Source: Macrostomum lignano
Lineage: Eukaryota
NCBI GenBank assembly: GCA_002269645.1
Contig: NIVC01000469.1
Location: 62,001-126,000 of the forward strand
Length of the DNA stretch: 64,000 bases
Direction: 5' to 3'
The notes beneath the pieces were generated by a model. It was not told where the DNA came from. It did no database searches and worked only from the letters and a program-made list of their open reading frames with translations. A program made the position numbers and the translations under genes. Shown here piece by piece: positions 7,546 to 58,900 of the stretch. Positions within the stretch are counted from its first letter, which is position 1; each line of letters begins with the position of its first letter.

Positions 7546-7639
7546 CTACCGTCTACCTCTGTAGTTGTAATCTACCCTACTCTCTAATGCACGTGTTCCA
7601 CTTATTCTCTCACTTTTACCCACGTACAATTGCAAAATC

Positions 7640-7678
7640 TTATCTAACCTAATCTCTTACTTAACTACAGATTTTCAG
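7640..7678 (+). promoter_or_regulatory. Branch point + 3' splice acceptor immediately upstream of fucosidase ATG (5'UTR intron or trans-splice acceptor)
   Basis: ctaac...ctaat...ttaactacag (AG 7669-70) lies 18 nt before ATG 7689; a second AG is at 7677-78. Confidence 0.5.
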
Positions 7679-7688
7679 AGTCTTCGAC

Positions 7689-10600
7689 ATGTACCGCCAG
7701 CTTTGCCTGCCGCTGCTACTGCTGTTGTTGCTGCTGCTGCTCCGCCAGGCTGGCCCCGCCGCGGCTCGCTACGAGCCCAACTGGCAGTCGCTGGACAGCC
7801 GGCCCCTGCCGGGCTGGTACGACCAGGCCAAGATTGGCGTCTTCATTCACTGGGGCGTGTTCTCCGTGCCAGGGTTCGGCAACGAGTGGTTCTGGTGGCG
7901 CTGGCGCGGTGTACCGCCTTTTGTGCGGCCTGAGCAGCCGTTTGTGGACTTTATGGCGGCAAACTATCCGCCAGGATTCACCTATGCCGACTTTGCCAGG
8001 GAGTTCAAGGTGCGGCGCCTGCTGTCTCAGGGGTGGGGTTTGGGAAAAGACACAAGGTGGTGCGAAAAGACACAAGATGGTGGGAAAAAACAAGATGGTG
8101 AGAAAAGACACAAGATGGTGAGAAAAGGCACAAGATGGTGGGAAAAAACAAGATGGTGAGAAAAGACACAAGATGATGAGAAAAGGCACAAGATGATGAG
8201 AAAAGACACAAGATGGTGAGAAAAGACACAAGATGGTGGGGAAAGACACAAGATGATGAGAAAAGACACAAGATGGTGAGAAAAGACACAAGATGGTGAG
8301 AAAAGACACAAGATGGTGGGAAAGACACATGATGATGTGGAAAGACACAAGGTGGTGCGGAAAGACACAAGATGGTGAGAAAGGACAAAAGATGGTGAGA
8401 AAAGGCACAAGATGGTGGAGAAAGACACAAGAAGGTGTAGAAAGACACAAGATGGTGGGAAAGGACACAAGATGGTGAGAAAGGACAAAATATGGTGAGA
8501 AAAGACACAAGATGGTGAGAAAAGGCACAAGATGGTGGAGAAAGACACAAGAAGGTGTAGAAAGACACAAGAAGGTGGAGAAAGACACAGGTGGTGCGGA
8601 AAGACACAAGATGGTGAAAAAAGGCACAAGATGGTGGAGAAAGATACAAAAAGGTGAAGAAAGACACAAGATGGTAGGAAAGACACAAGATGGTGAGAAA
8701 AGACACAAAATGGTGGGCAAAGACGAAAGAAAGTTGAAAAGACACTATGGTGTGGAAAGACACAAGATGGTGACGAAGTACACAAGAAGGTGAGAAAAGA
8801 CACAAGGTGGTGAGAAAAGACACAATATGGTGGAGAAAGACACAAGATGGTGGAGAAAGACACAAGATGGTGAGGAAAGACACAAGATGGTGGGAAAAGA
8901 CACATGATGGTAGAGAAAGACACAAGATGGTGGGGAAAGACACAAGATGGTGAGGAAAGACAAAAGAAGTTGAGAAAAGACACAAGATGGTGAGGAAAGA
9001 CACAAGATGGTGACGACAGACATGAAGTTGAGAAAAGACACAAGATGGTGGGGAAAGACACAAGAAGATGGGGGAAGACACAAGATGGTGGGGAAAGACA
9101 CAATAACGGAGTGTGCATTCGCTTCGCCATCAAACCCAGGCCGAGCTGTTCAACCCAAGAACAGCTCGGTGGGAAAAGACACAAGAAGATGGGGAAATAC
9201 ACAAGATGGTGGGGAAAGACACAATAACGGAGTGTGCATTCGCTTCGCCATCAAACCCAGGCCGAGCTGTTCAACCCAAGAACAGCTCGGTGGGAAAAGA
9301 CACAAGAAGATGGGGAAAGACACAAGATGGTGGGGAAAGACACAATAACGGAGTGTGCATTCGCTTCGCCATCAAACCCAGGCCGAGCTGTTCAACCCGG
9401 AGGCGTGGGCGGACACCCTGTCCCGCTCCGGTGCCAAATACGTAGTGCTAACTTCCAAGCATCACGAAGGCTACTGCCTGTGGAACACCAGCCATTCGTT
9501 CAATTGGAACTCGGCGCAGGTTGGCTCCGGTCGCAATCTGCTAGCCGAACTGGCTGCCGCTATTCGAAATCGCAGCGACGGCCCCCGATTCGGCGTTTAT
9601 CACTCCCTGTACGAATGGTACAATCCGCTGTACTTGACTGACGCGCAAAATAACTTTGTGACGCAAGACTTTGTTCGCTATAAGACTATGGCGGAGCTGT
9701 ACGAATTGGTCAATCAGTACCGGCCTGAGGTCATCTGGAGCGATGGGGATGCCGGTGAGATATATTCTGAGTCTATTTTAATAGTTGGGAGGTCAACTGA
9801 CCCCTTGGCACATAGTTTTCATGAAGGTCAGCTGACCCTGACCCACTTTACCTGCAGTCCATTTAGTGGTCAAGTTATCCCCCCCCCCCAGACTTGCATT
9901 ATGTGTGGAGGTCAACTGACCACCTTGACATTCAGTATGTATGAAGGTCAACTGATTCCCCTTGAAATTAAGTTTACAGTGGAGGTCAGCTGACCCCCCC
10001 TTGATATGCAGTCTATAGTGGAGGTCAGCTGACCCCCCTTGACATTCAGTCTATAGTGAAGGTCAGCTGACCCCCCTTAGCATGCAGTCTATAGTGAAGG
10101 TCAGCTGACCCCCTTGACATGCAGTCTATAGTGGAGGTCAGCTGACCCCCCTTGACATGCAGTCTATAGTGGAGGTCAGCTGACCCCCCTTGACATTCAG
10201 TCTATAGTGAAGGTCAGCTGACCCCCCTTAGCATGCAGTCTATAGTGAAGGTCAGCTGACCCCCTTGACATGCAGTCTATAGTGGAGGTCAGCTGACCCT
10301 CTTGACATGCAGTTGATAGTGGAGGTCAGCTGACCCCCTTGACATGCAGTTTATAGTGGAGGTCAGCTGACCCCCTTGACATGCAGTCTATAGTGAAGGT
10401 CAGCTGACCCTGACATGCAGTCTAAAGTGGAGGTCAGCTGACCCCCCTTGACATGCAGTCTATAGTGAAGGTCAGCTGACCCCCTTAGCATGCAGTCTAT
10501 AGTAAAGGTCAGCTGACCCCCTTGACATGCAGTTGATAGTGAAGGTCAGCTGACCCCCTTGACATGCAGTCTATAGTGGAGGTCAGCTGACCCCCTTGAC

Positions 10601-22100: not shown

Positions 22101-23504
22101 CAGGTCCAGGTGCTGGGATTGTGACCAGCTGCTGGGAGTGTGACCAGGTGCTGGGAGTGTGACCAGGTGTTGGGATTGTGACCAGGTGCTGGGATTGTGA
22201 CCAGGTGCTGGGAGTGTGACCAGGTGCTATGAGTGTGACCAGGTGCTGGGAGTGTGACCAGGTGCTATGAGTGTGACCAGGTGCTGGGAGTGTGACCAGG
22301 TGCTGGGATTGTGACCAGGTGCTGGGATTGTGACCAGGTGCTGGGATTGTGACCAGGTGCTGGGATTGTGACCAGGTGCTGGGAGTGTGACCAGGTGCTA
22401 TGAGTGTGACCAGGTGCTGGGAGTGTGACCAGGTGCTGGGAGTGTGACCAGGTGTTATGAGTGTGACCAGGTGCTGGGATTGTGACCATGTGTTATGAGT
22501 GTGACCAGGTGCTGGGAGTGTGACCAGGTGCTGGGAGTGTGACCAGGTGTTATGAGTGTGACCAGGTTTTTGGAGTGTGACCAGGTGCTCATCAGAGGGT
22601 TACTGAGCCCTATCTACCTATTCCGCTTTCGCCTCCCTCACTGCTGCTCAGGTCGGAGGCCACCCCGGTTGAGTTCGGTCTCGCCGACGTTCGCGAGGCC
22701 TCAACCAAAGGCCGCTGGTGGCTGGTCGGCGCCGCCTACACCCCGCAGGCGCCTGATTTGCCGGCACCAACCGTCCAAACCGCCGCCGCCGCAACGCCGT
22801 CCGCCATCGGCAACCAGAGCCAGCAGCGGCACCTGGACTCCATGGCCGCCCGGCTTGGCCTGAAGACGCCGCAGCGGCGCGCCATCTTCGCCGCACTGGT
22901 TGGCGCCGCCGACGCCGACGACGCCGCTGCCCGACTGCTCCACCTGATGTCCACCGCTGCCGGCGCCACCGCCGCCGCTGACGTGGCCAGCATCGCCTTG
23001 AAATGCGCGACTCGAGAGTCGGCCAGCTACAATCCGTTTTATGCCGCCGCGCTGCTGCGTGTCCGGCGCGGTAGCCGGCGCTTTGCCATGCCGCTGCGCT
23101 GCGCCATCTGGGACCAGCTGGCCGCTCTTGGCGACACCCGGCAGGACCGGGCGGCCCGCCTGGGCGACCTCATCGCCGACCTCCTGCTGGCCGGCGCCCT
23201 CCCGCCAGCCGCCGTCATGTCGCGCTTTCCGTTCGAACTCGTTCCCGGCGCCGGAAGTAAACCCGGAAGTAAATCCGGAACAGCTTCCGGTGGTAGCTCG
23301 GCCGCCGTCTGTTTGATTTCGTTTGCCGCCGCTTTGAAGCGTCGGGCCGCCGATTCGCCGGAACTTCCGGCTCTGCTCACGGGCCTAGCCGGCGATGCGG
23401 AAGTGGCCCGGTGCCTGGCCGCCGGACTGGTGGTGGCGGGGCGGCAGCTGAACTGCCCGGAGGCCGACTGGCTGCTTCAGCGGCTGCGCTCGCTTGCTAG
23501 CTAA
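19168..23504 (+). CDS. NOM1: Nucleolar MIF4G domain-containing protein 1 (NOM1/Sgd1) (join 19168..20025, 21681..22090, 22652..23504; 706 aa)
   Basis: Motifs EAEIRRYSRLLKLNKR, GLDYLL, RGLVNRVSE (MIF4G), NNNYRKIPGYD, GRWWLVGAAY, YNPFYA (MA3). Phases 0/2 are consistent; total 2121 nt. Confidence 0.93.
20040..21610. repeat. ~34-bp G-rich minisatellite (gagggagggtggtatctcacagtgtcagagatga) in NOM1 intron 1
   Basis: Directly visible; each unit has an atctc...gagat mini-stem. Confidence 0.95.
22105..22590. repeat. 19-bp minisatellite (gtgaccaggtgctgggagt) in NOM1 intron 2
   Basis: About 25 copies. Confidence 0.95.
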
Positions 23505-23784
23505 TAAATTACTGCTACTTAAAGTAGACTTGATAATCGTTTTGTTTGAATTTTTTATTTGCATTTTCAAATTCGGCGATATTTTCGATAACGCTACTGA
23601 ACAGTAGTAGTATGATTGTGCGTTAAGTACTAAATACATGTGCATGCGTGCGTACTGCTTTGGCCAGTCGTTCTCGAGACGTTGGAAAATCTCATGGCTT
23701 GTCGACCTGATTATTTGTAGTTTTTTATTATTCTTATGGTTAATGTTAAATTAACCATAAGAATAATAATGAACTTGTGATTAA

Positions 23785-23945
23785 GACTCGAAATCCCATA
23801 TCTCACATTGCCAATAGCTAGGGAACAAAGACTCGAAATCCCATATCTCACATTGCCGTTAGCAAGGGAACAAAGACTCGAAATCCCATATCTCACATTG
23901 CCGCTAGCTAGGGAACAAAGACTCGAAATCCCATATATCACATTG
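23785..23945. repeat. 45-bp tandem repeat, ~3.5 copies, between NOM1 and MCM9
   Basis: gactcgaaatcccatatctcacattgcc...gggaacaaa units. Confidence 0.9.
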
Positions 23946-24049
23946 TAGGCAATAAAGAATCAAAATTCCGATCCACCTACACTTCCAACACTTAGTGTAC
24001 AAAGACCCGCAGTGTACAAAGACCCCCATCGTCAAAAACTGCTCCGCAG

Positions 24050-27000
24050 TCGCAGCAGTCAGCCGCTCGGACGGTCGACCCCGATGTCGCCGCGGCGACC
24101 GCGTCCTTCCAAGCTTACTTGGTTCGCACCCACGCCAGCGACCTGCGCGACATCCTCGCCGACTCGGGGCCGCCTGACTCGCACCGCTCCGTGCGCCTGC
24201 ACGGCCATTCGTTGAACGACTCGATGCCCGACCTCCTGGCCACCCTGCTGCTCAGCCCGCTCCGCCTGCTGCCCGCCATGGACGCCGCTCTGTCGGCCGC
24301 CTGTCGCCAGTTGATGTCGGAGGCTGCGGACGAACTGAAAGCCGACTGGACCATCAAAACCAATGTCCACGCCCGGCTCATTGACCTGCCTCGCATCCCT
24401 GAGTATCATCGCAGCCGCATACCGACCTCCGCCGATGTCGGCAGGTACATCTGCTTCGTTGGCACTGTGGTCCGCCGGACGGAGAACAAGCTGGTTGAGC
24501 ACGAGCGGCGATTCGAGTGCGCCCGTTGTAGACGGCGCTTCGCCGTCCCGGCGGAGTTCGAGCGGCATTTTGCCATCGAGCCGCCGAAGCGATGCCCGCT
24601 GGCCGACTGCGGCAGCCTCAGCGTTCGCCAGTGCGAAGAGGAGACGCCCAGGTGCTCCAACTACCAGGAGATGCGGGTGCAGGAGCAGCCCCAGCGCCTG
24701 CCCGTTGGCGCCGTGCCGCGTAGCGTTCTGGTGAGCGGGGCCGGGGATTTGAGGTTGAGCAGGGATTATAGGTTTTAGTAGGGATTTTAGGGTTGAGCAG
24801 GGATTTTAGGGTTGAGTAGGGATTTTAGGGTTGAGCAGGGGTTTTAGGGTTGAGTAGGGATTTTAGGGTTGAGTGGGGATTTTAGTGTTGAGTAGGGATT
24901 TTAGAGTTTAGTAGGGATTTTAGCGTTGAGTAGGGATTTTAGGGTTGAGTAGGGATTTTAGTGTTAAGCAGGGATTTTAGGGTTGAGTAGGGATTTTAGG
25001 GTTGAGCAGGGATTTTAGTGTTGAGTAGGGATTTTAGGGTTGAGTAGGGATTATAGGGTTGAGTAGGGATTTTAGGGTTGAGTAGGGATTTTAGCGTTGA
25101 GTAGGGATTTTAGAGTTGAGCAGGGATTATAGGGTTGAGTAAGGATTATAGGGTTGAGTAGGGATTTTAGATTTGAGCAGGGATTTTCGGGTTGAGTAGG
25201 GATTTTAGAGTTGAGTAGGAATTTTAGGGTTGAGTAGGGATTTTAGGGTTGAGCAGGGATTTTTTACTTGAGTTGAGTAGCAGAGATTAGGATGTTACGG
25301 ATTTGGGGTAAAATAGGATCGGATTATCATTTGGGATCATATAGGAATATGAGCATGTGTACAACTCTCTTAAATGGCAGCATTCGACCCGAAAGCCATC
25401 TCAAACCCCAAATCCCGGCAGGTGTGTCTCGAGCACGACCTTGTCGACGCCTGTCAGCCAGGCGAGGACGTCCAGCTGTTCGGCGTTGTGCTGCGCCGCT
25501 GGCAGACGCTGCTGCCCGGCCAGCCGGCCGAGTGCGACCTCGTGCTGCGCTGCTGCGCGCTGGAGGAGAGCCTTGGCGCCCAGCGCAGCTGCCAGCTGGT
25601 CACCAACGAGAGGCGCAAGGAGTTCCACGACTACTGGGCCTCCGCTGGTCAGCCTGGGCTGCAGGGGGCTGCTGCTCTGATTCCCCATGCGGTCACCTGC
25701 TCTGATTCCCCATGCGGTCACCTGCTCTGATTCCCCATGCGGTCACCTGCTCTGATTCCCCCTGCTGTCACCTCTGATTCCCCATGCTGTCACCTGTTCT
25801 GATTCCCCCTGCTGTCACCTGTTCTAATTCCCCATGCTGTCACCTGCTCTGATTCCCCCTGCTGTCACCTGTTCTGTTCCCCCCCTGTTGTCACCTGCTC
25901 TGATCCCCCTGCTGTCACCTGTTCTAATTCCCCATGCTGTCACCTGCTCTGATCCCCCTGCTGTCACCTGTTCTAATTCCCCATGCTGTCACCTGCTCTG
26001 ATTCCCCCTGCTATCACCTGTTCTGATTCCCCCTGCTGTCACCTGTTCTGATTCCCCATGCTGTCACCTGTTCTGATTCCCCCTGCTGTCACCTGTTCTG
26101 TTCCCCCCCCCCCTGTTGTCACCTGCTCTGATCCCCCCCTGCTGTCACCTGTTCTGATTCCCCATGCGGTCACTTGCTCTGATTCCCCATGCTGTCACTC
26201 CAATTCCCTACTGTCACAATTCCCTGCTGTCACAATTCCTTGCTGTCACAAAACCCTGCTGTCACTCTAATTCCCTGCTGAAACAATTCCCTGCTGTCAC
26301 AATTCCCATACCTGTCAACTACATGTGGTTCCTAACTTCCCCTTCCCCCACTACAGGCGACCAGCCGCTGCTGGCCCGGGATCGAATCCTGGCCGGCATA
26401 TGCCCGCAGCTGTGCGGCCTCCGTCTGGCCAAGCTGGCCGTCGCCCTCACCCTGGCCGGCGGTGTCCAGAAGTCCACCGAGAGCGGGCACCGGACCCGAG
26501 GCCAGCCGCACCTGCTGCTAATTGGCGATCCGGGCACCGGCAAGTCGCAGTTCCTGCGCTTTGCCAGCCGCCTCGCCAGCCGCTCGGTGCTCACCACCGG
26601 AGTCGGCAGCAGCGCCGCCGGCCTGACCGCCGCCGCAGTTCGCGAAGGCGGCCAGTGGGCCCTGGAGGCCGGAGCTCTCGTGCTTGCCGACGGCGGAGTC
26701 TGCTGCATTGACGAGTTCAACTCCGTTGGCGAGCGGGACCGGACCTGCATTCACGAGGCCATGGAGCAGCAGACCCTGTCCGTGGCCAAGGCCGGCCTGG
26801 TGTGCAAGCTCAACACCCGCTGCTCCGTGCTGGCCGCCACCAACCCGCACGGCAAGCTGGACACCGGCCAGAGCCTCAGCGTCAACACCAACCTGGCCAG
26901 CCCGCTGCTCAGCCGCTTCGACCTCGTGCTGGTCATGCTGGATAGGGGCGACCCGGCCTGGGATGCCGCCGTGTCTGAGCACGTGCTCAAGGCCCTTATC

Positions 27001-29319
27001 GAGCGGTGCGCCCCGTTCTTTTATAGGGATTTGATTGGGATAATTGTTGTTTGATAAGGAATGGAGATTGGGATTAAACACGGTTGGGGATTGGGATTAG
27101 ACACCGGATGGGGATCGGGATTAGACACGGGATGAGAATTGGGATTAAACACGGGATGGGGATTGGGATTATACATGGAGTGGGGATTGGGATTATACAC
27201 GGAGTGGGGATTGGGATTAGACACGGGATGAGAATTGGGATTAGACACGGGATGGGGAATTGCATTAGACACGTAGTGGGGATTGGGATTAGACACGGGA
27301 GGGGGATCGGGATTAGACACGGAGTGGGGATTGGGATTAGACACGGGATGGGGAATGGGATTAGACACGGAGTTGGGATTGGGATTAGACACGGAGTTGG
27401 GATTGGGATTAGACACGGGATGGGGATTGGGATTAGACACGGAGTTGGGATTGGGATTAGACACGGAGTGGGGAATGGGGTTAGACACGGAGTGGGGATT
27501 GGGATTAGACAGGGGAGGGGGATTGGGATTAGACACGGGATGAGGATTGGGATTAGACACGGGATGGGGATTGGGATTATACACGGGATGGGGATTGGGA
27601 TTAGACACGGGATGGGGATTGGGATTAGACACGGGATGGGGATTGTGATTAGACACGGAATGGGGATCGGGATTAGACACGGGATGGTGATTTGAGATTG
27701 CTATTGCGCTACTAGATAGAAATTGAAAAGCTGTTGGGGATTTTGGAATCTTCAACTTCCCTTTATTTCACCGCTTCAGCGACGACCCCGAAGATTCCGA
27801 GGACTCGAACGATTTGCCGGTCAACGACAAGGAGAACGCGCCGACATTGGCGCCGGCAGCGAGTGAACCCCAGCAGCAGCAGCGGCGGCAGCCAGTGTGG
27901 AACCTGGAGCGCCTGCAGGCCTACTTTGCGTACGCTCGCAGCATCAACCCGACCATCGGAGCCGAGGCCGGCGCCGTACTGACCGCTTACTATCAGCGCC
28001 AGCGGGCGGCCACGACGCCGGATCAACTTGGCGCCGATCGTAGCGCCGCGCGGACAACCACACGCCTATTGGAGAGCTGCATCCGGCTGGCCGAAGCTCA
28101 CGCCAGGCTGATGCTCAGGCCGACTGTCAGCCTGCTGGACGCGCTCATGGCCGTCTCGGTTGTTGAAGCCTCCATGGTCGGCGCCGCTCTGGTTCCAGGA
28201 AATGGCAGAGGCGGCGGCGTGGGTATCGGGCCGCTAGCCAGCTTCCCGGAGCAGCCGGATGCCGAGTTTGCTCAGGAGGCCCGCCAGCTGCTGGCCGCAC
28301 TCGGGCTGCACCGTCTGCTAGCGTCCGCCGTCGACGGAGAAGTCGGAACTATGATCGGTGACGCTATCGACGCTGCGTCGGTGATAAATTTGTCTCCGCC
28401 GGGCGGTCGGCCGGTTCTGGCGCTGTCGCGTCAAGAGTTCCGCGCCGGCGAGAAGTCGCGCCTGGCCTCCTCGGCATCGTCGGCTTCGCCGGCAAAGCGT
28501 CGCCGCACGATTGTCGATGACGTCGACAACAATGACGAGGACAACGACAAGCAAAAATGGGAAAACGCCAAGTCGTCGCTAGCAGTTGACAATGTCGCCA
28601 ATACTCTCGTTCAATCGATTTCTTCAGCGTCTAGCGCCGCATTGCAGTTCGACATTCAGACTGACTGGTTTCAGGCTGGGCAGAATAGCGACGGAGTTTC
28701 CAATCCTCCGGCCACTTCCGTTCCGGCCACTTCCGGTCCGGCCACTTCCGGTCGGGCTACTTCCGGCCCGTCTACTTCCGGTCTGGGTACTTCCGGTTCG
28801 AAGGCTTCTAACGCGTTTTGTCCAATATTTTCCATTGACGATTTTGACATTCCCGACGTTATTGACAACCTGGAGACGCCGAAGGAGGCCGTCAGCGGCA
28901 AAACAGCGGCTGTCGTTGCCATGGATACCAACCAGACTCAGCCGGAGAACTCTGGCAGGCTCTCCGGCGCCCCGATGCTGCCGCCGCCACCACCAGCGGC
29001 CGCCATCACCAATAGTCAGCAGCCGAGTCAGAGGTTTGCGTTCAAGCGGCTGTCCGCTGTGCCAACGACGTCTTCGTCAACGGCTTCTGCAGGCGGCGGC
29101 GGCAGCGGTCTTTCAAGCCGTCCGCTTGCTCAGGGCACAATGGCCAAGTTGAGGGCTTTCGAATGCTCCCAAGATCCGCGAAAAACCGCCCCCAAATCCG
29201 CCCCTAAATCCGCTCCCGAATCCGCCCCCAAATCCGCTCTAGATGCTCCCGCCGAGGCCAGTGCGGCTGAACTGTTCAGCATCGACGAACTGCTCAACGA
29301 GTCAGATTTTGATTTGTAG
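24050..29319 (+). CDS. MCM9: MCM9 helicase (join ~24050..24730, 25422..25647, 26357..27005, 27780..29319; ~1030 aa; start codon not found in the genomic sequence)
   Basis: N-terminal, OB and Zn-finger regions; [21 protein letters not shown]; Walker [10 protein letters not shown]; Walker B CCIDEF; HEAMEQQT; Arg finger LLSRFD; [21 protein letters not shown]. Phases 0/1/2 are consistent; total 3096 nt. Confidence 0.95.
24750..25300. repeat. 19-bp minisatellite (gggattttagggttgagta) in MCM9 intron 1
   Basis: Directly visible; contains TTAGGG. Confidence 0.93.
25675..26320. repeat. 25-bp minisatellite (ctgctctgattccccatgcggtcac) in MCM9 intron 2
   Basis: Directly visible; degenerates toward the 3' end. 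Confidence 0.92.
27060..27700. repeat. 24-bp minisatellite (gggattgggattagacacgggatg) in MCM9 intron 3
   Basis: 8-aa periodic translation GIGIRHGM. Confidence 0.95.
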
Positions 29320-30318: not shown

Positions 30319-30362
30319 GATGCATCAGCGCCAACTCCGGCCCCTTTTCACTTCTGCTGAAG

Positions 30363-42196
<11,834 letters not shown>

Positions 42197-46943: not shown

Positions 46944-49900
46944 AAACACTGAGACTGATGGACACTGAGACTGATAAACAGTGAGACTGATAAACAGTGA
47001 GACTGATAAACACTGAGACTGATAAACACTGAGACTGATAAACACTGAGACTGATAAACACTGAGACTGATAAACAGTGAGACTGATAAACACTGAGACT
47101 GATGGGCACTGAGACTGATGGACACTGAGACTGATAAACAGTGAGACTGATAAACAGTGAGACTGATGGACACTGAGACTGATGGACACTGAGACTGATG
47201 GACACTGAGACTGATGGACACTGAGACTGATAAACACTGAGACTGATAAACAGTGAGACTGATGGACACTGAGACTGATGGACACTGAGACTGATGGACA
47301 CTGAGACTGATAAACAGTGAGACTGATGGACACTGAGACTGATAAACAGTGAGACTGATGGACACTGAGACTGATGGACACTGAGACTGATGGACACTGA
47401 GACTGATAAACAGTGAGACTGATGGACACTGAGACTGATAAACAGTGAGACTGATGGACACTGAGACTGATGGACACTGAGACTGATGGACACTGAGACT
47501 GATAAACAGTGAGACTGATGGACACTGAGACTGATGGACACTGAGACTGATAAACAGTGAGACTGATGGACACTGAGACTGATGGACACTGAGACTGATA
47601 AACAGTGAGACTGATAAACAGTGAGACTGATGGACACTGAGACTGATGGACACTGAGACTGATGGACACTGAGACTGATGGATACTGAGACTGATAAACA
47701 CTGAGACTGATGGACACTGAGACTGATAAACAGTGAGACTGATGGACACTGAGACTGATGGACACTGAGACTGATGGACACTGAGACTGATAAACAGTGA
47801 GACTGATGGACACTGAGACTGATGGACACTGAGACTGATGGACACTGAGACTGATAAACAGTGAGACTGATAAACAGTGAGACTGATAAACAGTGAGACT
47901 GATAAACAGTGAGACTGATAAACAGTGAGACTGATAAACACTGAGACTGATGGACACTGAGACTGATAAACACTGAGACTGATGGACACTGAGACTGATA
48001 AACAGTGAGACTGATGGACACTGAGACTGATAAACAGTGAGACTGATAAACACTGAGACTGATAAACAGTGAGACTGATAAACACTGAGACTGATAAACA
48101 GTGAGACTGATAAACACTGAGACTGATAAACACTGAGACTGATAAACAGTGAGACTGATAAACACTGAGACTGATAAACAGTGAGACTGATAAACACTGA
48201 GACTGATAAACAGTGAGACTGATAAACACTGAGACTGATAAACACTGAGACTGATAAACAGTGAGACTGATAAACAGTGAGACTGATAAACAGTGAGACT
48301 GATAAACACTGAGACTGATAAACACTGAGACTGATAAACAGTGAGACTGATAAACAGTGAGACTGATAAACAGTGAGACTGATAAACACTGAGACTGATA
48401 AACACTGAGACTGATAAACAGTGAGACTGATAAACAGTGAGACTGATAAACAGTGAGACTGATAAACACTGAGACTGATGGACACTGAGACTGATGGACA
48501 CTGAGACTGATGGACACTGAGACTGATAAACAGTGAGACTGATGGACACTGAGACTGATGGACACTGAGACTGATAAACAGTGAGACTGATAAACACTGA
48601 GACTGATAGACACTGAGACTGATGGACACTGAGACTGATGGACACTGAGACTGATAAACACTGAGACTGATGGACACTGAGACTGATAAACAGTGAGACT
48701 GATGGACACTGAGACTGATAAACAGTGAGACTGATGGACACTGAGACTGATGGACACTGAGACTGATGGACACTGAGACTGATAAACAGTGAGACTGATG
48801 GACACGGAGACTGATGGACACTGAGACTGATAAACAGTGAGACTGATAAACAGTGAGACTGATGGACACTGAGACTGATAAACACTGAGACTGATAAACA
48901 CTGAGACTGATGGACACTGAGACTGAAAAACACTGAGACTGATAAACACTCAGACTGATGGACACTGAGACTGATAAACAGTGAGACTGATAAACACTGA
49001 GACTGATGGACACTGAGACTGATGGACACTGAGACTGATGGACACTGAGACTGATGGATACTGAGACTGATAAACACTGAGACTGATGGACACTGAGACT
49101 GATAAACAGTGAGACTGATGGACACTGAGACTGATGGACACTGAGACTGATGGACACTGAGACTGATAAACAGTGAGACTGATGGACACTGAGACTGATG
49201 GACACTGAGACTGATGGACACTGAGACTGATAAACAGTGAGACTGATAAACAGTGAGACTGATAAACAGTGAGACTGATAAACAGTGAGACTGATAAACA
49301 GTGAGACTGATAAACACTGAGACTGATGGACACTGAGACTGATAAACACTGAGACTGATGGACACTGAGACTGATAAACAGTGAGACTGATGGACACTGA
49401 GACTGATAAACAGTGAGACTGATAAACACTGAGACTGATAAACAGTGAGACTGATAAACACTGAGACTGATAAACAGTGAGACTGATAAACACTGAGACT
49501 GATAAACACTGAGACTGATAAACAGTGAGACTGATAAACACTGAGACTGATAAACAGTGAGACTGATAAACACTGAGACTGATAAACAGTGAGACTGATA
49601 AACACTGAGACTGATAAACACTGAGACTGATAAACAGTGAGACTGATAAACAGTGAGACTGATAAACAGTGAGACTGATAAACACTGAGACTGATAAACA
49701 CTGAGACTGATAAACAGTGAGACTGATAAACAGTGAGACTGATAAACAGTGAGACTGATAAACACTGAGACTGATAAACACTGAGACTGATAAACAGTGA
49801 GACTGATAAACAGTGAGACTGATAAACAGTGAGACTGATAAACACTGAGACTGATGGACACTGAGACTGATGGACACTGAGACTGATGGACACTGAGACT

Positions 49901-52900
49901 GATAAACAGTGAGACTGATGGACACTGAGACTGATGGACACTGAGACTGATAAACAGTGAGACTGATGGACACTGAGACTGATGGACACTGAGACTGATA
50001 AACAGTGAGACTGATAAACAGTGAGACTGATGGACACTGAGACTGATGGACACTGAGACTGATGGACACTGAGACTGATGGATACTGAGACTGATAAACA
50101 CTGAGACTGATGGACACTGAGACTGATAAACAGTGAGACTGATGGACACTGAGACTGATGGACACTGAGACTGATGGACACTGAGACTGATAAACAGTGA
50201 GACTGATGGACACTGAGACTGATGGACACTGAGACTGATGGACACTGAGACTGATAAACAGTGAGACTGATAAACAGTGAGACTGATGGACACTGAGACT
50301 GATAAACAGTGAGACTGATAAACAGTGAGACTGATAAACAGTGAGACTGATAAACACTGAGACTGATGGACACTGAGACTGATAAACACTGAGACTGATG
50401 GACACTGAGACTGATAAACAGTGAGACTGATGGACACTGAGACTGATAAACAGTGAGACTGATAAACACTGAGACTGATAAACAGTGAGACTGATAAACA
50501 CTGAGACTGATAAACAGTGAGACTGATAAACACTGAGACTGATAAACACTGAGACTGATAAACAGTGAGACTGATAAACACTGAGACTGATAAACAGTGA
50601 GACTGATAAACACTGAGACTGATAAACAGTGAGACTGATAAACACTGAGACTGATAAACACTGAGACTGATAAACAGTGAGACTGATAAACAGTGAGACT
50701 GATAAACAGTGAGACTGATAAACACTGAGACTGATAAACACTGAGACTGATAAACAGTGAGACTGATAAACAGTGAGACTGATAAACAGTGAGACTGATA
50801 AACACTGAGACTGATAAACACTGAGACTGATAAACAGTGAGACTGATAAACAGTGAGACTGATAAACAGTGAGACTGATAAACACTGAGACTGATGGACA
50901 CTGAGACTGATGGACACTGAGACTGATGGACACTGAGACTGATAAACAGTGAGACTGATGGACACTGAGACTGATGGACACTGAGACTGATAAACAGTGA
51001 GACTGATAAACACTGAGACTGATAGACACTGAGACTGATGGACACTGAGACTGATGGACACTGAGACTGATAAACACTGAGACTGATGGACACTGAGACT
51101 GATAAACAGTGAGACTGATGGACACTGAGACTGATAAACAGTGAGACTGATGGACACTGAGACTGATGGACACTGAGACTGATGGACACTGAGACTGATA
51201 AACAGTGAGACTGATGGACACGGAGACTGATGGACACTGAGACTGATAAACAGTGAGACTGATAAACAGTGAGACTGATGGACACTGAGACTGATAAACA
51301 CTGAGACTGATAAACACTGAGACTGATGGACACTGAGACTGAAAACACTGAGACTGATAAACACTCAGACTGATGGACACTGAGACTGATAAACAGTGAG
51401 ACTGATAAACACTGAGACTGATGGACACTGAGACTGATGGACACTGAGACTGATGGACACTGAGACTGATGGATACTGAGACTGATAAACACTGAGACTG
51501 ATGGACACTGAGACTGATAAACAGTGAGACTGATGGACACTGAGACTGATGGACACTGAGACTGATGGACACTGAGACTGATAAACAGTGAGACTGATGG
51601 ACACTGAGACTGATGGACACTGAGACTGATGGACACTGAGACTGATAAACAGTGAGACTGATAAACAGTGAGACTGATAAACAGTGAGACTGATAAACAG
51701 TGAGACTGATAAACAGTGAGACTGATAAACACTGAGACTGATGGACACTGAGACTGATAAACACTGAGACTGATGGACACTGAGACTGATAAACAGTGAG
51801 ACTGATGGACACTGAGACTGATAAACAGTGAGACTGATAAACACTGAGACTGATAAACAGTGAGACTGATAAACACTGAGACTGATAAACAGTGAGACTG
51901 ATAAACACTGAGACTGATAAACACTGAGACTGATAAACAGTGAGACTGATAAACACTGAGACTGATAAACAGTGAGACTGATAAACACTGAGACTGATAA
52001 ACAGTGAGACTGATAAACACTGAGACTGATAAACACTGAGACTGATAAACAGTGAGACTGATAAACAGTGAGACTGATAAACAGTGAGACTGATAAACAC
52101 TGAGACTGATAAACACTGAGACTGATAAACAGTGAGACTGATAAACAGTGAGACTGATAGACACTGAGACTGATAAACAGTGAGACTGATAAACACTGAG
52201 ACTGATAGACACTGAGACTGATGGACACTGAGACTGATGGACACTGAGACTGATAAACACTGAGACTGATGGACACTGAGACTGATAAACAGTGAGACTG
52301 ATGGACACTGAGACTGATAAACAGTGAGACTGATAAACAGTGAGACTGATAAACACTGAGACTGATAAACACTGAGACTGATAAACAGTGAGACTGATAA
52401 ACAGTGAGACTGATAAACAGTGAGACTGATAAACACTGAGACTGATGGACACTGAGACTGATGGACACTGAGACTGATGGACACTGAGACTGATAAACAG
52501 TGAGACTGATGGACACTGAGACTGATGGACACTGAGACTGATAAACAGTGAGACTGATAAACACTGAGACTGATAGACACTGAGACTGATGGACACTGAG
52601 ACTGATGGACACTGAGACTGATAAACACTGAGACTGATGGACACTGAGACTGATAAACACTGAGACTGATAAACACTGAGACTGATAAACAGTGAGACTG
52701 ATAAACACTGAGACTGATAAACACTGAGACTGATAAACAGTGAGACTGATAAACACTGAGACTGATAAACAGTGAGACTGATAAACACTGAGACTGATAA
52801 ACAGTGAGACTGATAAACACTGAGACTGATAAACACTGAGACTGATAAACAGTGAGACTGATAAACAGTGAGACTGATAAACAGTGAGACTGATAAACAC

Positions 52901-55900
52901 TGAGACTGATAAACACTGAGACTGATAAACAGTGAGACTGATAAACAGTGAGACTGATAGACACTGAGACTGATAAACAGTGAGACTGATAAACACTGAG
53001 ACTGATAGACACTGAGACTGATGGACACTGAGACTGATGGACACTGAGACTGATAAACACTGAGACTGATGGACACTGAGACTGATAAACAGTGAGACTG
53101 ATGGACACTGAGACTGATGGACACTGAGACTGATAAACAGTGAGACTGATAAACACTGAGACTGATAAACACTGAGACTGATAAACAGTGAGACTGATAA
53201 ACAGTGAGACTGATAAACAGTGAGACTGATAAACACTGAGACTGATGGACACTGAGACTGATGGACACTGAGACTGATGGACACTGAGACTGATAAACAG
53301 TGAGACTGATGGACACTGAGACTGATGGACACTGAGACTGATAAACAGTGAGACTGATAAACACTGAGACTGATAGACACTGAGACTGATGGACACTGAG
53401 ACTGATGGACACTGAGACTGATAAACACTGAGACTGATGGACACTGAGACTGATAAACAGTGAGACTGATGGACACTGAGACTGATAAACAGTGAGACTG
53501 ATGGACACTGAGACTGATGGACACTGAGACTGATGGACACTGAGACTGATAAACAGTGAGACTGATGGACACGGAGACTGATGGACACTGAGACTGATAA
53601 ACAGTGAGACTGATAAACAGTGAGACTGATGGACACTGAGACTGATGGACACTGAGACTGATGGACACTGAGACTGATAAACACTGAGACTGATAAACAC
53701 TGAGACTGATGGACACTGAGACTGAAAAACACTGAGACTGATAAACACTCAGACTGATGGACACTGAGACTGATAAACAGTGAGACTGATAAACACTGAG
53801 ACTGATGGACACTCAGACTGATAAACACTGAGACTGATGGACACTGAGACTGATAAACAGTGAGACTGATGGACACTGAGACTGATGGACACTGAGACTG
53901 ATGGACACTGAGACTGATAAACAGTGAGACTGATGGACACTGAGACTGATAAACAGTGAGACTGATGGACACTGAGACTGATAAACAGTGAGACTGATGG
54001 ACGCTGAGACTGATGGACACTGAGACTGATAAACACTGAGACTGATAAACAGTGAGACTGATAAACAGTGAGACTGATGGACACTGAGACTGATGGACAC
54101 TGAGACTGATGGACACTGAGACTGATAAACAGTGAGACTGATAAACAGTGAGACTGATGGACACTGAGACTGATAAACAGTGAGACTGATAAACACTGAG
54201 ACTGATGGACACTGAGACTGATGGACACTGAGACTGATAAACACTGAGACTGATAAACAGTGAGACTGATAAACAGTGAGACTGATGGACACTGAGACTG
54301 ATAAACAGTGAGACTGATAAACAGTGAGACTGATAAACACTGAGACTGATAAACAGTGAGACTGATAAACACTGAGACTGATGGACACTGAGACTGATGG
54401 ACACTGAGACTGATAAACACTGAGACTGATAAACAGTGAGACTGATAAACAGTGAGACTGATGGACACTGAGACTGATGGACACTGAGACTGATGGACAC
54501 TGAGACTGATAAACACTGAGACTGATGGACACTGAGACTGATAAACAGTGAGACTGATGGACACTGAGACTGATGGACACTGAGACTGATGGACACTGAG
54601 ACTGATAAACACTGAGACTGATAAACAGTGAGACTGATAAACAGTGAGACTGATGGACACTGAGACTGATGGACACTGAGACTGATGGACACTGAGACTG
54701 ATGGACACTGAGACTGATAAACACTGAGACTGATAAACAGTGAGACTGATGGACACTGAGACTGATAAACACTGAGACTGATAAACAGTGAGACTGATAA
54801 ACAGTGAGACTGATGGACACTGAGACTGATAAACAGTGAGACTGATAAACAGTGAGACTGATGGACACTGAGACTGATGGACACTCAGACTGATGGACAC
54901 TGAGACTGATAAACACTGAGACTGATGGACACTCAGACTGATGGACACTCAGACTGATGGACACTGAGACTAATGGACACTGAGACTGATAAACAGTGAG
55001 ACTGATGGACACTGAGACTGATAAACAGTGAGACTGATGGACACTGAGACTGATAAACAGTGAGACTGATGGACACTGAGACTGATGGACACTCAGACTG
55101 ATGGACACTCAGACTGATGGACACTGAGACTGATGGACACTGAGACTGATGGACACTGAGACTGATGGACACTGAGACTGATGGACACTGAGACTGATGG
55201 ACACTCAGACTGATGGACACTCAGACTGATGGACACTCAGACTGATGGACACTGAGACTGATAAACAGTGAGACTGATGGACACTGAGACTGATGGACAC
55301 TGAGACTGATGGACACTCAGACTGATGGACACTCAGACTGATGGACACTGAGACTGATGGACACTGAGACTGATAAACAGTGAGACTGATGGACACTGAG
55401 ACTGATAAACAGTGAGACTGATGGACACTGAGACTGATAAACAGTGAGACTGATGGACACTGAGACTGATGGACACTGAGACTGATGGACACTCAGACTG
55501 ATGGACACTGAGACTGATAAACAGTGAGACTGATGGACACTGAGACTGATAAACAGTGAGACTGATGGACACTGAGACTGATAAACAGTGAGACTGATAA
55601 ACAGTGAGACTGATGGACACTGAGACTGATAAACAGTGAGACTGATAAACACTGAGACTGATGGACACTGAGACTGATGGACACTGAGACTGATAAACAC
55701 TGAGACTGATAAACAGTGAGACTGATAAACAGTGAGACTGATGGACACTGAGACTGATAAACTGAGACTGATAAACAGTGAGACTGATAAACACTGAGAC
55801 TGATAAACAGTGAGACTGATAAACACTGAGACTGATGGACACTGAGACTGATGGACACTGAGACTGATAAACACTGAGACTGATAAACAGTGAGACTGAT

Positions 55901-58900
55901 AAACAGTGAGACTGATGGACACTGAGACTGATGGACACTGAGACTGATGGACACTGAGACTGATAAACACTGAGACTGATGGACACTGAGACTGATAAAC
56001 AGTGAGACTGATGGACACTGAGACTGATGGACACTGAGACTGATGGACACTGAGACTGATAAACACTGAGACTGATAAACAGTGAGACTGATAAACAGTG
56101 AGACTGATGGACACTGAGACTGATGGACACTGAGACTGATGGACACTGAGACTGATGGACACTGAGACTGATAAACACTGAGACTGATAAACAGTGAGAC
56201 TGATGGACACTGAGACTGATAAACAGTGAGACTGATAAACAGTGAGACTGATGGACACTGAGACTGATGGACACTCAGACTGATGGACACTGAGACTGAT
56301 AAACACTGAGACTGATGGACACTCAGACTGATGGACACTCAGACTGATGGACACTGAGACTATGGACACTGAGACTGATAAACAGTGAGACTGATGGACA
56401 CTGAGACTGATAAACAGTGAGACTGATGGACACTGAGACTGATAAACAGTGAGACTGATGGACACTGAGACTGATGGACACTCAGACTGATGGACACTCA
56501 GACTGATGGACACTGAGACTGATGGACACTGAGACTGATGGACACTGAGACTGATGGACACTGAGACTGATGGACACTGAGACTGATGGACACTCAGACT
56601 GATGGACACTCAGACTGATGGACACTGAGACTGATGGACACTGAGACTGATAAACAGTGAGACTGATGGACACTGAGACTGATGGACACTGAGACTGATG
56701 GACACTCAGACTGATGGACACTCAGACTGATGGACACTGAGACTGATGGACACTGAGACTGATAAACAGTGAGACTGATGGACACTGAGACTGATAAACA
56801 GTGAGACTGATGGACACTGAGACTGATAAACAGTGAGACTGATGGACACTGAGACTGATGGACACTGAGACTGATGGACACTCAGACTGATGGACACTGA
56901 GACTGATAAACAGTGAGACTGATGGACACTGAGACTGATAAACAGTGAGACTGATGGACACTGAGACTGATGGACACTCAGACTGATGGACACTGAGACT
57001 GATGGACACTGAGACTGATAAACAGTGAGACTGATGGACACTCAGACTGATGGACACTCAGACTGATGGACACTCAGACTGATGGACACTGAGACTGATA
57101 AACAGTGAGACTGATGGACACTGAGACTGATGGACACTCAGACTGATGGACACTCAGACTGATGGACACTCAGACTGATGGACACTGAGACTGATGGACA
57201 CTGAGACTGATAAACAGTGAGACTGATAAACAGTGAGACTGATGGACACTGAGACTGATGGACACTGAGACTGATGGACACTCAGACTGATGGACACTGA
57301 GACTGATAAACAGTGAGACTGATGGACACTGAGACTGATGGACACTCAGACTGATGGACACTGAGACTGATGGACACTGAGACTGATAAACAGTGAGACT
57401 GATGGACACTCAGACTGATGGACACTCAGACTGATGGACACTCAGACTGATGGACACTGAGACTGATGGACACTCAGACTGATGGACACTGAGACTGATA
57501 AACAGTGAGACTGATGGACACTCAGACTGATGGACACTGAGACTGATGGAACTGAGACTGATAAACAGTGAGACTGATGGACAATCAGACTGATGGACAC
57601 TCAGACTGATGGACACTGAGACTGATGGACACTGAGACTGATAAACAGTGAGACTGATGGACACTCAGACTGATGGACACTCAGACTGATGGACACTCAG
57701 ACTGATGGACACTCAGACTGATGGACACTGAGACTGATGGACACTGAGACTGATGGACACTGAGACTGATGGACACAGTGAGACTGATAAACACTGAGAC
57801 TGATGGACACTGAGACTGATGGACACTGAGACTGATGGACACTGAGACTGATGGACACTGAGACTGATAAACAGTGAGACTGATGGACACTCAGACTGAT
57901 GGACACTCAGACTGATGGACACTGAGACTGATGGACACTGAGACTGATAAACAGTGAGACTGATGGACACTCAGACTGATGGACACTCAGACTGATGGAC
58001 ACTCAGACTGATGGACACTGAGACTGATGGACACTGAGACTGATGGACACTGAGACTGATGGACACTGAGACTGATGGACACTGAGACTGATAAACAGTG
58101 AGACTGATAAACACTGAGACTGATACACTGAGACTGATGGACACTCAGACTGATGGACACTCAGACTGATGGACACTGAGACTGATAAACAGTGAGACTG
58201 ATAAACACTGAGACTGATAAACACTGAGACTGATAAACAGTGAGACTGATAAACACTGAGACTGATAAACAGTGAGACTGATAAACACTGAGACTGATAA
58301 ACAGTGAGACTGATAAACACTGAGACTGATAAACACTGAGACTGATAAACAGTGAGACTGATAAACAGTGAGACTGATAAACAGTGAGACTGATAAACAC
58401 TGAGACTGATAAACACTGAGACTGATAAACAGTGAGACTGATAAACAGTGAGACTGATAAACAGTGAGACTGATAAACACTGAGACTGATAAACACTGAG
58501 ACTGATAACAGTGAGACTGATAAACAGTGAGACTGATAAACAGTGAGACTGATAAACACTGAGACTGATGGACACTGAGACTGATGGACACTGAGACTGA
58601 TGGACACTGAGACTGATAAACAGTGAGACTGATGGACACTGAGACTGATGGACACTGAGACTGATAAACAGTGAGACTGATGGACACTGAGACTGATGGA
58701 CACTGAGACTGATAAACAGTGAGACTGATAAACAGTGAGACTGATGGACACTGAGACTGATGGACACTGAGACTGATGGACACTGAGACTGATGGACACT
58801 GAGACTGATAAACACTGAGACTGATGGACACTGAGACTGATAAACAGTGAGACTGATGGACACTGAGACTGATGGACACTGAGACTGATGGACACTGAGA

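What the first reader, a model, noticed from the sequence alone, without database searches (positions are those of the whole stretch)
23990..24230. MCM9 has no in-frame ATG before its conserved N-terminus: candidate spliced-leader-donated start codon
Seen: the MCM9 frame is open from an in-frame TAG (23993-95) to the first in-frame ATG at ~24225. The segment [20 protein letters not shown] (from ~24074) aligns with the start of human MCM9 ([21 protein letters not shown]), about 50 codons before that ATG. Three acceptor AGs (24048-49, 24054-55, 24057-58) all join in phase 0, and the first ATG after them (24084) is out of frame. Established: flatworm spliced leaders end in AUG, and in Schistosoma that AUG can serve as the initiator Met. 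Inference: SL trans-splicing supplies Met1 ([13 protein letters not shown]...), so MCM9 translation would depend on trans-splicing.
Basis: partly seen in the sequence, partly recalled or inferred. Interest (0 to 1): 0.75.

Follow-up and report, generated by a model that had tools for sequence, protein, structure and literature searches.

The report
Flatworm MCM9 start codon from spliced leader
In the flatworm Macrostomum lignano the DNA-repair helicase gene MCM9 has no start codon of its own in the right place, and almost certainly gets it from the short leader RNA that is spliced onto its message; this trick is already known in flatworms, so this is a clean new example, not a new mechanism.

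Summary
The window is Macrostomum lignano Mlig_3_7, contig NIVC01000469.1:62001-126000. The MCM9 frame is open from TAG 23993-95. It has no in-frame ATG until 24224-26, about 38 codons after the conserved N-terminal motif begins. Three AGs (24048-49, 24054-55, 24057-58) all join in phase 0.

Homology to human MCM9 and about 50 other homologues, codon bias, and a GC jump at 24050 all place the true N-terminus at about 24050.

The RNA-seq-guided GenBank model (PAA82448.1, BOX15_Mlig025887g3, "partial") begins its CDS exactly at 24050, right after CAG. The frame stays open 18 codons further upstream, so the annotated mRNA 5' end is that acceptor. The homeologous copy starts at the same base. The annotation pipeline (TBONE) cuts transcriptional units at spliced-leader read peaks. 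MCM9 is gene 3 of a unit shared with the upstream gene.

The published M. lignano leader ends ...TTGCATG, so the mature mRNA would read ATG|TCG CAG CAG... ([13 protein letters not shown]...).

Not shown here: SL-containing reads at this site, and actual initiation at the SL AUG.

The mechanism has been known since Cheng et al. 2006 in Schistosoma, and Macrostomum workers have noted the SL ATG as a start codon. Verdict: interpretation supported; new member of a known kind; modest interest.

The parts
22758..23504 (+). Last coding exon and stop codon (TAA 23502-04) of the upstream gene BOX15_Mlig025887g2. It is a 715-aa protein with an MA3 domain. It belongs to the same annotated transcriptional unit as MCM9.
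23502..23507 (+). AATAAA poly(A) signal of the upstream gene, overlapping its stop codon. It lies 546 nt before the MCM9 acceptor.
   Evidence: sequence read directly
23505..24049 (+). AT-rich intergenic region, the presumed outron. It holds a 45-bp tandem repeat (23783-23945), a 20-bp perfect palindrome (23727-23771) and a 17-bp direct repeat just before the acceptor. Copy numbers differ in the homeolog, including a frame-shifting 17-bp indel, so this region is not coding.
23993..23995 (+). In-frame TAG that closes the MCM9 frame upstream.
24048..24049 (+). AG of the inferred SL trans-splice acceptor (ctccgCAG|TCG), phase 0. The annotated CDS and mRNA 5' end lie at 24050 in this copy, and at the same base in the homeolog.
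24054..24058 (+). Two further in-frame AGs (24054-55, 24057-58) in a CAGCAG run. They are possible alternative acceptors that would drop only 2 or 3 residues.
24050..24730 (+). MCM9 exon 1 (N-terminal helical subdomain, Zn finger, OB fold). With the SL AUG the protein would begin [29 protein letters not shown].
24071..24073 (+). ACG, the only in-frame near-cognate codon between the acceptor and the conserved motif. It is the rival non-AUG start.
24084..24215 (+). Out-of-frame ATG with a 43-codon ORF. It is the first AUG a ribosome would meet after skipping the SL AUG, and it ends 8 nt before ATG 24224.
24224..24226 (+). First genomic in-frame ATG (codon 59 counted from 24050). Starting here would delete the conserved N-terminal helices.
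25422..25647 (+). MCM9 exon 2.
   Evidence: agrees with PAA82448.1
26357..27005 (+). MCM9 exon 3 (AAA+ core: Walker A GDPGTGKS, Walker B CCIDEF, SRFD arginine finger).
27780..29319 (+). MCM9 exon 4 (lid and winged-helix region, then a long low-complexity C-terminal tail), ending in stop TAG 29317-19.

Best explanation
MCM9 of Macrostomum lignano (BOX15_Mlig025887g3) is transcribed as the downstream gene of a polycistronic or read-through unit, together with the MA3-domain gene that ends at 23504. The pre-mRNA is resolved by spliced-leader trans-splicing at the acceptor CAG|TCG (24049|24050). The 35-nt leader CGGTCTCTTACTGCGAAGACTCAATTTATTGCATG is joined so that its terminal AUG sits in frame directly before codon TCG. 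This gives a mature mRNA whose first AUG is the leader's own, 32 nt from the cap. Translation from it yields [25 protein letters not shown]..., a full-length MCM9 of about 1032 aa with a normal N-terminal length. The genome encodes no usable start codon for this N-terminus. Untrans-spliced RNA could at best give a protein truncated at Met59.

Shown: the sequence anatomy, the homology, the position of the annotated 5' end, and the published SL sequence.

Inferred: that the annotated 5' end reflects SL reads at this gene, and that ribosomes initiate at the SL AUG.
For: 1. Identity. The window is 100% identical to M. lignano NIVC01000469.1.

2. Need for an upstream start. Exon 1 aligns to human MCM9 from residue 11, E about 1e-30. 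In 20 metazoan MCM9 proteins, Met1 lies 9-21 aa before the conserved Phe, against 20 for an SL-AUG start. In the HMMER scan of 1.84 billion representatives, 26 of the 30 best non-self hits have N-termini within -10 to +5 aa of position 24050.

3. Coding signal starts at 24050. GC3 is 0.86 and the codon log-likelihood is best in frame for 24050-24223. For 23996-24049, GC3 is 0.39 and the log-likelihood is negative. GC jumps from 0.54 to 0.74 at 24050. The homeolog has a 17-bp, frame-breaking indel just upstream of the AG.

4. Annotated 5' end. The GenBank CDS PAA82448.1 is partial and starts [10 protein letters not shown] at 24050. PAA62297.1 in the homeolog starts at the identical base. The frame is open 18 and 37 codons further upstream in the two copies, so the transcript models start at the acceptor.

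5. Pipeline. TBONE cuts transcriptional units at SL-read peaks (PMC5730564). Upstream gene g2 and MCM9 (g3) share the unit name Mlig025887. The 546-nt spacing is under the 1-kb operon threshold of PMC8629364.

6. Internal control. Two other 5'-partial CDSs nearby also start right after consensus CAG acceptors: fucosidase at 7671, and the L002 gene at 15671. Other 5' ends do not. CAG precedes only 1.2% of positions.

7. The SL ends in ATG. The SL AUG is accepted as an initiator in flatworms (PMC9851317, PMC12582326, PMC5832876). It is noted as a translation start codon in Macrostomum (PMC10468722).

8. In the SL-joined mRNA the next AUG is out of frame.

9. Both homeologs keep an intact 1032-codon ORF, dN/dS about 0.36.
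Against: - No SL-containing read, cDNA or peptide for this gene was seen. The databases I could reach hold no transcript-derived N-terminal fragment, and paper supplements do not list the gene.
- The annotation's 5' ends are not always trans-splice sites: 19141, 30369 and L002 1305 are not preceded by AG. The boundary argument is therefore strong but indirect.
- The two homeologs are about 99% identical here, and reads multi-map, so their agreement is not fully independent.
- The acceptor does not match the most enriched trans-splice motif [T/C]TNCAG (CCGCAG), and its pyrimidine tract is modest.
- The SL AUG context (U at -3, U at +4) is weak, so some leaky scanning is likely.
Confidence: 0.8

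Rival explanations
1. Translation starts at the first genomic in-frame AUG (24224). This gives an MCM9 that lacks its first ~58 residues. The open frame upstream would be 5' UTR that only looks conserved.
For: It is the only in-frame genomic ATG. The SL AUG context is weak. The out-of-frame 43-codon ORF from 24084 ends 8 nt before this ATG, so reinitiation is conceivable.
Against: Residues 18-58 align with human MCM9 residues 11-51 inside a significant HMMER alignment, and with 20 orthologues. Codon bias and GC3 of 24050-24223 are coding-like in that frame only. None of the 30 best full N-terminus homologues starts that late. An upstream in-frame AUG on the mature mRNA, plus an out-of-frame AUG, would both intercept scanning ribosomes first.
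Confidence: 0.07
2. A cis-spliced upstream micro-exon supplies the ATG. Candidates are ATGATT|GTGCGT at 23612-17 and ATG|GTTAAT at 23736-38. Another version is a donor inside the upstream gene at 23429|23430, as used in the chimeric UniRef model A0A1I8IBQ2.
For: Five phase-0 ATG...|GT candidates exist in the intergenic region, and two are identical in the homeolog. An older gene model joins ...CLAAGL of the upstream gene directly to SQQSAART using the same acceptor.
Against: None of the donors matches the GT[A/G]AG consensus reported for M. lignano. The RNA-seq-guided GenBank model has no such exon and ends at the acceptor. The sister UniRef model takes a different, plainly ab initio path through intergenic sequence. 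The upstream gene has its own stop codon and an AATAAA signal. A 1875-aa fusion of the upstream MA3-domain protein, MCM9 and the next gene has no counterpart among the homologues.
Confidence: 0.06
3. Non-AUG initiation at the in-frame ACG 24071-73 on an mRNA whose 5' end is near 24050.
For: ACG is the only in-frame near-cognate codon downstream of the acceptor and upstream of the conserved motif. It has G at +4. It would give 13 residues before the conserved Phe, within the normal range.
Against: C at -3 is a poor context. Without an SL the leader would be only ~21 nt. With an SL, an in-frame AUG lies 21 nt upstream and would be used first. An mRNA end that falls exactly after CAG is explained by splicing, not by transcription initiation.
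Confidence: 0.04
4. Assembly or annotation artefact, or a decaying gene copy: the real gene has an ATG that is missing from this contig.
For: M. lignano assemblies are repeat-rich and the genome is a hidden polyploid. The GenBank entry is flagged partial.
Against: Two independently assembled homeologous contigs show the same ATG-less 5' region. Both keep an uninterrupted ORF of about 1030 codons with dN/dS about 0.36.
Confidence: 0.02

Closest known systems
Schistosoma mansoni mRNAs that use the spliced leader's 3'-terminal AUG as initiator methionine (Cheng, Cohen, Ndegwa and Davis, J Biol Chem 2006; cited in PMC9851317, PMC12582326, PMC5832876)
   Same: A flatworm SL ending in AUG is joined in frame to an ORF that has no suitable genomic start codon. 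The SL AUG becomes Met1. From my own memory, not checked here: the last seven SL bases (UUGCAUG) are the same in both species.
   Different: This is a free-living macrostomorph, not a parasite. The gene (MCM9) is different. There is no experimental proof of initiation for this mRNA. Here a run of three in-frame AGs could give N-terminal microheterogeneity.
slORFs: ORFs created by SL addition in nematodes, Oikopleura and trypanosomes (slORFfinder, PMC9851317)
   Same: The start codon lies in the trans-spliced leader, so genome-only annotation misses or truncates the ORF.
   Different: Those cases mostly use near-cognate NUG codons inside the SL and often create alternative or extended ORFs. Here a canonical AUG at the very 3' end of the SL is needed for the conserved main ORF.
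SL-resolved operons of M. lignano (Wudarski et al. 2017, PMC5730564; Ustyantsev and Berezikov 2021, PMC8629364)
   Same: Same-strand neighbours less than 1 kb apart in one annotated transcriptional unit (Mlig025887 g2 and g3). The downstream gene's 5' end is at an AG acceptor. It is a conserved, replication-related gene, the class reported to be enriched for trans-splicing.
   Different: Those papers do not discuss start-codon supply and do not name this gene. Its acceptor (CCGCAG) departs from the top enriched motif [T/C]TNCAG.
Metazoan MCM9 (human MCM8-9 helicase; PDB 7DPD, 7W7P, 7YOX, 7WI7, 8S91)
   Same: N-terminal domain, OB fold with Zn finger, AAA+ core and lid are all present. The best PDB matches are MCM9 (E about 1e-30), against MCM8 at about 2e-4.
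   Different: Only 30-40% identity in the N-terminal domain. The C-terminal tail is long and species-specific. The start codon is not encoded at the locus.

Membership tests
Flatworm mRNAs initiated at the spliced-leader AUG (Cheng et al. 2006 class) | The organism has an SL RNA whose leader ends in AUG. | tested here: met
   The organism was identified as M. lignano. The published SL is CGGTCTCTTACTGCGAAGACTCAATTTATTGCATG (PMC8629364). No SL RNA gene lies in this window, which is expected because only eight copies are reported in the deduplicated genome.
Flatworm mRNAs initiated at the spliced-leader AUG (Cheng et al. 2006 class) | The mRNA is SL trans-spliced at an acceptor just upstream of the ORF. 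| tested here: inconclusive
   The evidence is strong but indirect. The annotated CDS and mRNA start at 24050, right after CAG, in both homeologs, although the frame is open further upstream. The pipeline sets such ends from SL reads. Two neighbouring genes show the same signature.
Flatworm mRNAs initiated at the spliced-leader AUG (Cheng et al. 2006 class) | The SL AUG is in frame with the main ORF, with no intervening stop. | tested here: met
   ATG|TCG CAG CAG TCA... reads straight into MCM9. All three candidate acceptors are phase 0.
Flatworm mRNAs initiated at the spliced-leader AUG (Cheng et al. 2006 class) | No genomic in-frame AUG can give the conserved N-terminus. | tested here: met
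   There is no ATG in frame between TAG 23993 and 24224, in this copy or in the homeolog. Homologues need a start 9-21 aa before the conserved Phe.
Flatworm mRNAs initiated at the spliced-leader AUG (Cheng et al. 2006 class) | Ribosomes actually initiate at the SL AUG. | not testable with these tools
   This needs N-terminal proteomics, initiation-site ribosome profiling or reporter assays.
MCM9 helicase | MCM9-type N-terminal domain and OB fold, scoring better against MCM9 than against other MCM paralogues. | tested here: met
   PDB phmmer: human and other MCM9 N-terminal domains at E 4e-32 to 1e-29; the next best are archaeal MCM and MCM6 at about 1e-8, and MCM8 at 2e-4. Pfam MCM_OB at 8.6e-14. 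Precomputed PF26066 MCM9_N on the annotated product.
MCM9 helicase | AAA+ MCM core with Walker A, Walker B and arginine finger, plus the lid. | tested here: met
   [14 protein letters not shown] and SRFD are present in the spliced product. PF00493 MCM and PF17855 MCM_lid hit the product. The top full-length hits are annotated MCM9 across Metazoa at 42-48% identity.
M. lignano SL-resolved operon | Adjacent same-strand genes less than 1 kb apart (repeat-adjusted), with the downstream one trans-spliced, inside one transcriptional unit. | tested here: met
   546 nt separate the g2 stop from the acceptor, of which 163 nt are tandem repeat. The shared unit name Mlig025887 g2/g3. Threshold from PMC8629364. 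The trans-spliced status of g3 is inferred as described above.

The most novel reading that the evidence does not exclude
Start-codon outsourcing may be a routine, genome-wide feature of this free-living flatworm and not a curiosity. Many of the CDSs flagged "partial" in the M. lignano GenBank annotation may in fact be complete once the SL AUG is added. For conserved genome-maintenance genes such as MCM9, translation would then be strictly gated by trans-splicing, so polycistronic or unprocessed RNA could make no functional protein. In this one 64-kb window and its homeolog, three annotated 5' ends fall right after CAG with the SL AUG in frame: MCM9, the fucosidase gene at 7671, and the gene after MCM9 in L002. 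In one of them the two homeologs differ by an AG-to-TG change at the acceptor. That hints that such start sites turn over quickly.
Probability: 0.4. Interest if true: 0.45.

Novelty: new member of a known kind. Interest (0 to 1): 0.3.

Why it matters
Practical value comes first. The GenBank and UniProt entries for this gene are either flagged partial or are chimeric fusions with the neighbouring genes. Adding the SL AUG gives a complete, normal-length MCM9. The same correction probably applies to many M. lignano gene models.

Biologically, the case shows a conserved DNA-repair/replication helicase whose expression would depend entirely on trans-splicing. It occurs in a model organism where conserved and neoblast-specific (stem-cell) genes are reported to be predominantly trans-spliced. 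M. lignano also has transgenesis, so SL-AUG initiation could be tested directly in a free-living flatworm.

It does not change what is known about the mechanism.

Tried and rejected
- **Word-indexed protein search with exon 1 alone** found nothing, although the full-length query then found the locus's own protein. The negative result therefore does not reliably show that transcript-derived N-terminal fragments are absent.
- **SL sequence in the window:** none with up to 3 mismatches. **Rfam:** no family in the window.
- **Supplements** of three M. lignano papers, and a full-text search for the gene identifiers, gave nothing about this gene. Cheng et al. 2006 and Wasik et al. 2015 are not held. 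Cheng et al. 2006 is cited second-hand through papers that summarise it. Nothing in this report is drawn from Wasik et al. 2015.
- **The local Pfam copy** gave MCM_OB but no MCM9_N hit for exon 1. I relied on the PDB and orthologue alignments instead.
- **The exhaustive HMMER scan** found no flatworm orthologue closer than about 40% identity apart from M. lignano itself. I could not test whether the ATG-less 5' end is shared by relatives.
- **Treating "partial" as evidence** was rejected. Neighbouring genes are also 5'-partial without an AG. Only the exact coincidence with CAG, with an open frame upstream, carries weight.
- **The chimeric UniRef models** were rejected as evidence for a cis-spliced fusion. 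The two homeolog models take different, ab initio-looking paths.
Full report
**What is in the sequence.** The region was read directly and translated.
- The MCM9 frame is closed by TAG at 23993-95. It then runs open through 24730.
- Its first in-frame ATG is at 24224-26.
- AGs at 24048-49, 24054-55 and 24057-58 each leave the following base at codon position 1.
- The first ATG after them, at 24084, is out of frame. It opens a 43-codon ORF ending at 24213-15.

**Gene model.** I built a four-exon model: 24050-24730, 25422-25647, 26357-27005 and 27780-29319. All junctions are GT-AG, and the product is 1031 aa. The introns are largely filled with tandem repeats.

**Organism and locus.** A full-length protein search returned a 100%-identical protein. 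It is PAA82448.1, [quoted passage not shown]. A 97%-identical homeolog, PAA62297.1 (BOX15_Mlig006306g1, partial), was also returned. Fetching their loci showed that the window is NIVC01000469.1:62001-126000 of assembly GCA_002269645.1 (Mlig_3_7) at 100% identity. The homeolog lies on NIVC01001953.1 (L002).

**Where the protein must start.**
- phmmer of exon 1 against PDB sequences hits human and other MCM9 N-terminal domains at E 4e-32 to 1e-29. MCM8 scores only 2e-4. Residue 18 of the query (24101) aligns with human residue 11.
- In a MAFFT alignment with 20 metazoan MCM9 proteins, the annotated Met1 lies 9-21 residues before the conserved Phe (worm SFQAY). The median is 16, with one outlier at 57. 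An SL-AUG start gives 20. The genomic ATG lies about 38 residues after that Phe, inside the conserved helices.
- An exhaustive HMMER scan of 1.84 billion representatives agrees. I derived offsets by hand from the alignment coordinates in the hit table. For 26 of the 30 best non-self hits the N-terminus falls within -10 to +5 residues of a start at 24050.
- Codon statistics put the start of coding at the acceptor. For 24050-24223, GC3 is 0.86 and the codon log-likelihood is positive only in the MCM9 frame. For the open stretch 23996-24049, GC3 is 0.39 and the score is negative. GC content steps from 0.54 to 0.74 at 24050.
- In the homeolog, an extra 17-bp repeat copy sits between the upstream stop and the AG. 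It shifts the frame, so that stretch is not coding.
- Neither homeolog has an in-frame ATG upstream of the conserved block.

**Evidence for trans-splicing at 24049|24050.** I could not reach reads, so the argument rests on the public annotation and how it was made.
- Mlig_3_7 gene models come from genome-guided transcript assembly into "transcriptional units". The TBONE pipeline cuts these into mature mRNAs at peaks of SL-containing reads (SL trimmed) and at poly(A) sites. ORFs are then called with TransDecoder (PMC5730564).
- The annotated CDS begins at 24050 with TCG (Ser) and is flagged 5'-partial.
- The frame stays open for 18 more codons upstream here, and for 37 in the homeolog. A 5'-partial ORF call would have extended further if the transcript did. 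The transcript models therefore begin at 24048-24050, immediately after CAG, in both copies.
- MCM9 is gene g3, and the upstream MA3-domain gene (stop at 23504, AATAAA at 23502-07) is g2, of the same unit Mlig025887. The boundary between them was therefore introduced by the cutting step.
- A cut made only at g2's poly(A) site would have left the extra upstream codons in the ORF.
- The 546-nt spacing is within the 1-kb operon criterion of Ustyantsev and Berezikov. They also report that conserved and neoblast-specific genes are predominantly trans-spliced (PMC8629364).

**Internal control for the boundary argument.** I looked at every other annotated CDS start that I could retrieve nearby.
- Two more 5'-partial CDSs begin directly after consensus acceptors with an open frame upstream. 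One is the alpha-L-fucosidase gene at 7671 (taactaCAG|ATTTTC). The other is the gene after MCM9 in L002 (cacttCAG|CTGAAG).
- Three other 5' ends are not preceded by AG: 19141, 30369 and L002 1305.
- The annotation therefore mixes SL-defined and coverage-defined 5' ends, and the CAG signature distinguishes them.
- CAG precedes only 1.2% of positions in this intergenic region.

**The start codon.** The single published M. lignano SL is CGGTCTCTTACTGCGAAGACTCAATTTATTGCATG.
- Joined at 24050, it gives ...UUGCAUG|UCGCAGCAG.... The SL AUG is the first AUG of the mRNA and is in frame with MCM9.
- The next AUG (24084) is out of frame, and the one after that is Met59.
- A terminal SL AUG can act as initiator methionine in flatworms. 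This was established for Schistosoma mansoni by Cheng et al. 2006. PMC9851317 summarises that work: the SL AUG is in frame in 28% of trans-spliced transcripts, and more than 40 cDNAs need it. PMC12582326 and PMC5832876 restate the mechanism.
- The M. cliftonense/M. hystrix genome paper explicitly labels the final ATG of the Macrostomum SL as a translation start codon (PMC10468722).
- The mechanism is therefore known. This gene is a new, well-defined instance of it.

**Rivals.**
- Met59 start. Initiation at Met59 would remove about 40 conserved residues. Homology, codon bias and the two upstream AUGs on the mature mRNA all argue against it.
- Cis-spliced ATG exon. None has a GT[A/G]AG donor, and the transcript-guided model contains no such exon.
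- Fusion with the upstream gene. Older UniRef models (A0A1I8IBQ2, A0A1I8I081) fuse the upstream gene, MCM9 and the next gene into 1875- and 2141-aa chimeras. One of them uses the same acceptor from a weak donor (CTG|GTGGTG at 23429|23430). The other takes a different path through intergenic sequence. Both look like ab initio bridging.
- Near-cognate start. The only in-frame near-cognate codon downstream of the acceptor is ACG 24071, in a poor context.
- Assembly error or pseudogene. This is unlikely. Two contigs agree, and both ORFs are intact, with 22 synonymous and 24 non-synonymous codon differences over 1032 codons, or dN/dS about 0.36.

**What remains unproven.**
- That SL reads really map at this site for this gene. 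I judge this very likely.
- Which of the three AGs is used, and in what proportion.
- That ribosomes initiate at the SL AUG. Its context (U at -3, U at +4) is weak, so some leaky scanning into the 24084 ORF is plausible.

**Verdict.** This is a new member of a known kind. Interest is modest (0.3), mainly because it corrects an annotation and offers a convenient test case in a transgenic flatworm model.

Noticed in passing
L002 15663-15680 and window 30349-30372: The gene just downstream of MCM9 is a second candidate for an SL-donated start. In the homeolog its 5'-partial CDS (636 aa) begins right after cacTTCAG|CTGAAGCCG in phase 0, which would read [10 protein letters not shown].... The first in-frame Met comes only about 130 aa later. 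In the window copy the same AG is TG (30355-56), and the annotated CDS (632 aa) starts 12 nt later at 30369, not after an AG. This allele difference at a trans-splice acceptor is unexplained.
   Followed up: partly
window 7600-7760: The alpha-L-fucosidase gene has a 5'-partial CDS that starts at 7671, right after taactaCAG|ATTTTCAGAGTC. The SL AUG would be in frame and would add MIFRVFD in front of the genomic Met of a signal-peptide-like [16 protein letters not shown].
   Followed up: partly
window 46944-64000: A 17-kb satellite of a 16-bp unit (AAACACTGAGACTGAT, about 1067 copies, 91% matches). It accounts for the strong GC and AT skew and for the huge overlapping minus-strand "ORFs" in several frames.
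   Followed up: partly
window 24744-25263, 25672-26200, 27040-27700; also 22106-22589: The MCM9 introns, and an intron of the upstream gene, consist almost entirely of short tandem repeats (19-bp, 25-bp and roughly 60-bp units). Exon boundaries sit close to the ends of the repeats.
   Followed up: no
window 23727-23771, 23783-23945, 23994-24027 versus L002 9500-10000: The intergenic outron holds a perfect 20-bp palindrome (L002 has only the left arm), a 45-bp repeat (3.6 copies here against about 1.6 in L002), and a 17-bp repeat AGTGTACAAAGACCCGC (2 copies here against 3 in L002). Repeat copy number is turning over quickly right next to a functional acceptor. A second AATAAA lies at 23951-56.
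   Followed up: partly
UniRef A0A1I8IBQ2 (P0121), A0A1I8I081 (P0125), A0A1I8F6F7 (P0004), A0A1I8JNW5 (P0003): Older M. lignano protein models for this locus are chimeras (upstream MA3-domain gene + MCM9 + next gene) or frameshifted read-throughs. Two of these chimeras carry the name "DNA helicase MCM9" in UniRef.
   Followed up: partly
window 28700-28790: The GenBank protein PAA82448.1 (1026 aa) lacks one PATSG unit of the (P/G)ATSG repeat that the genomic exon 4 encodes (1031 aa). Either the annotation contains a 15-nt gap or the transcript differs from the genome within this repeat.
   Followed up: no
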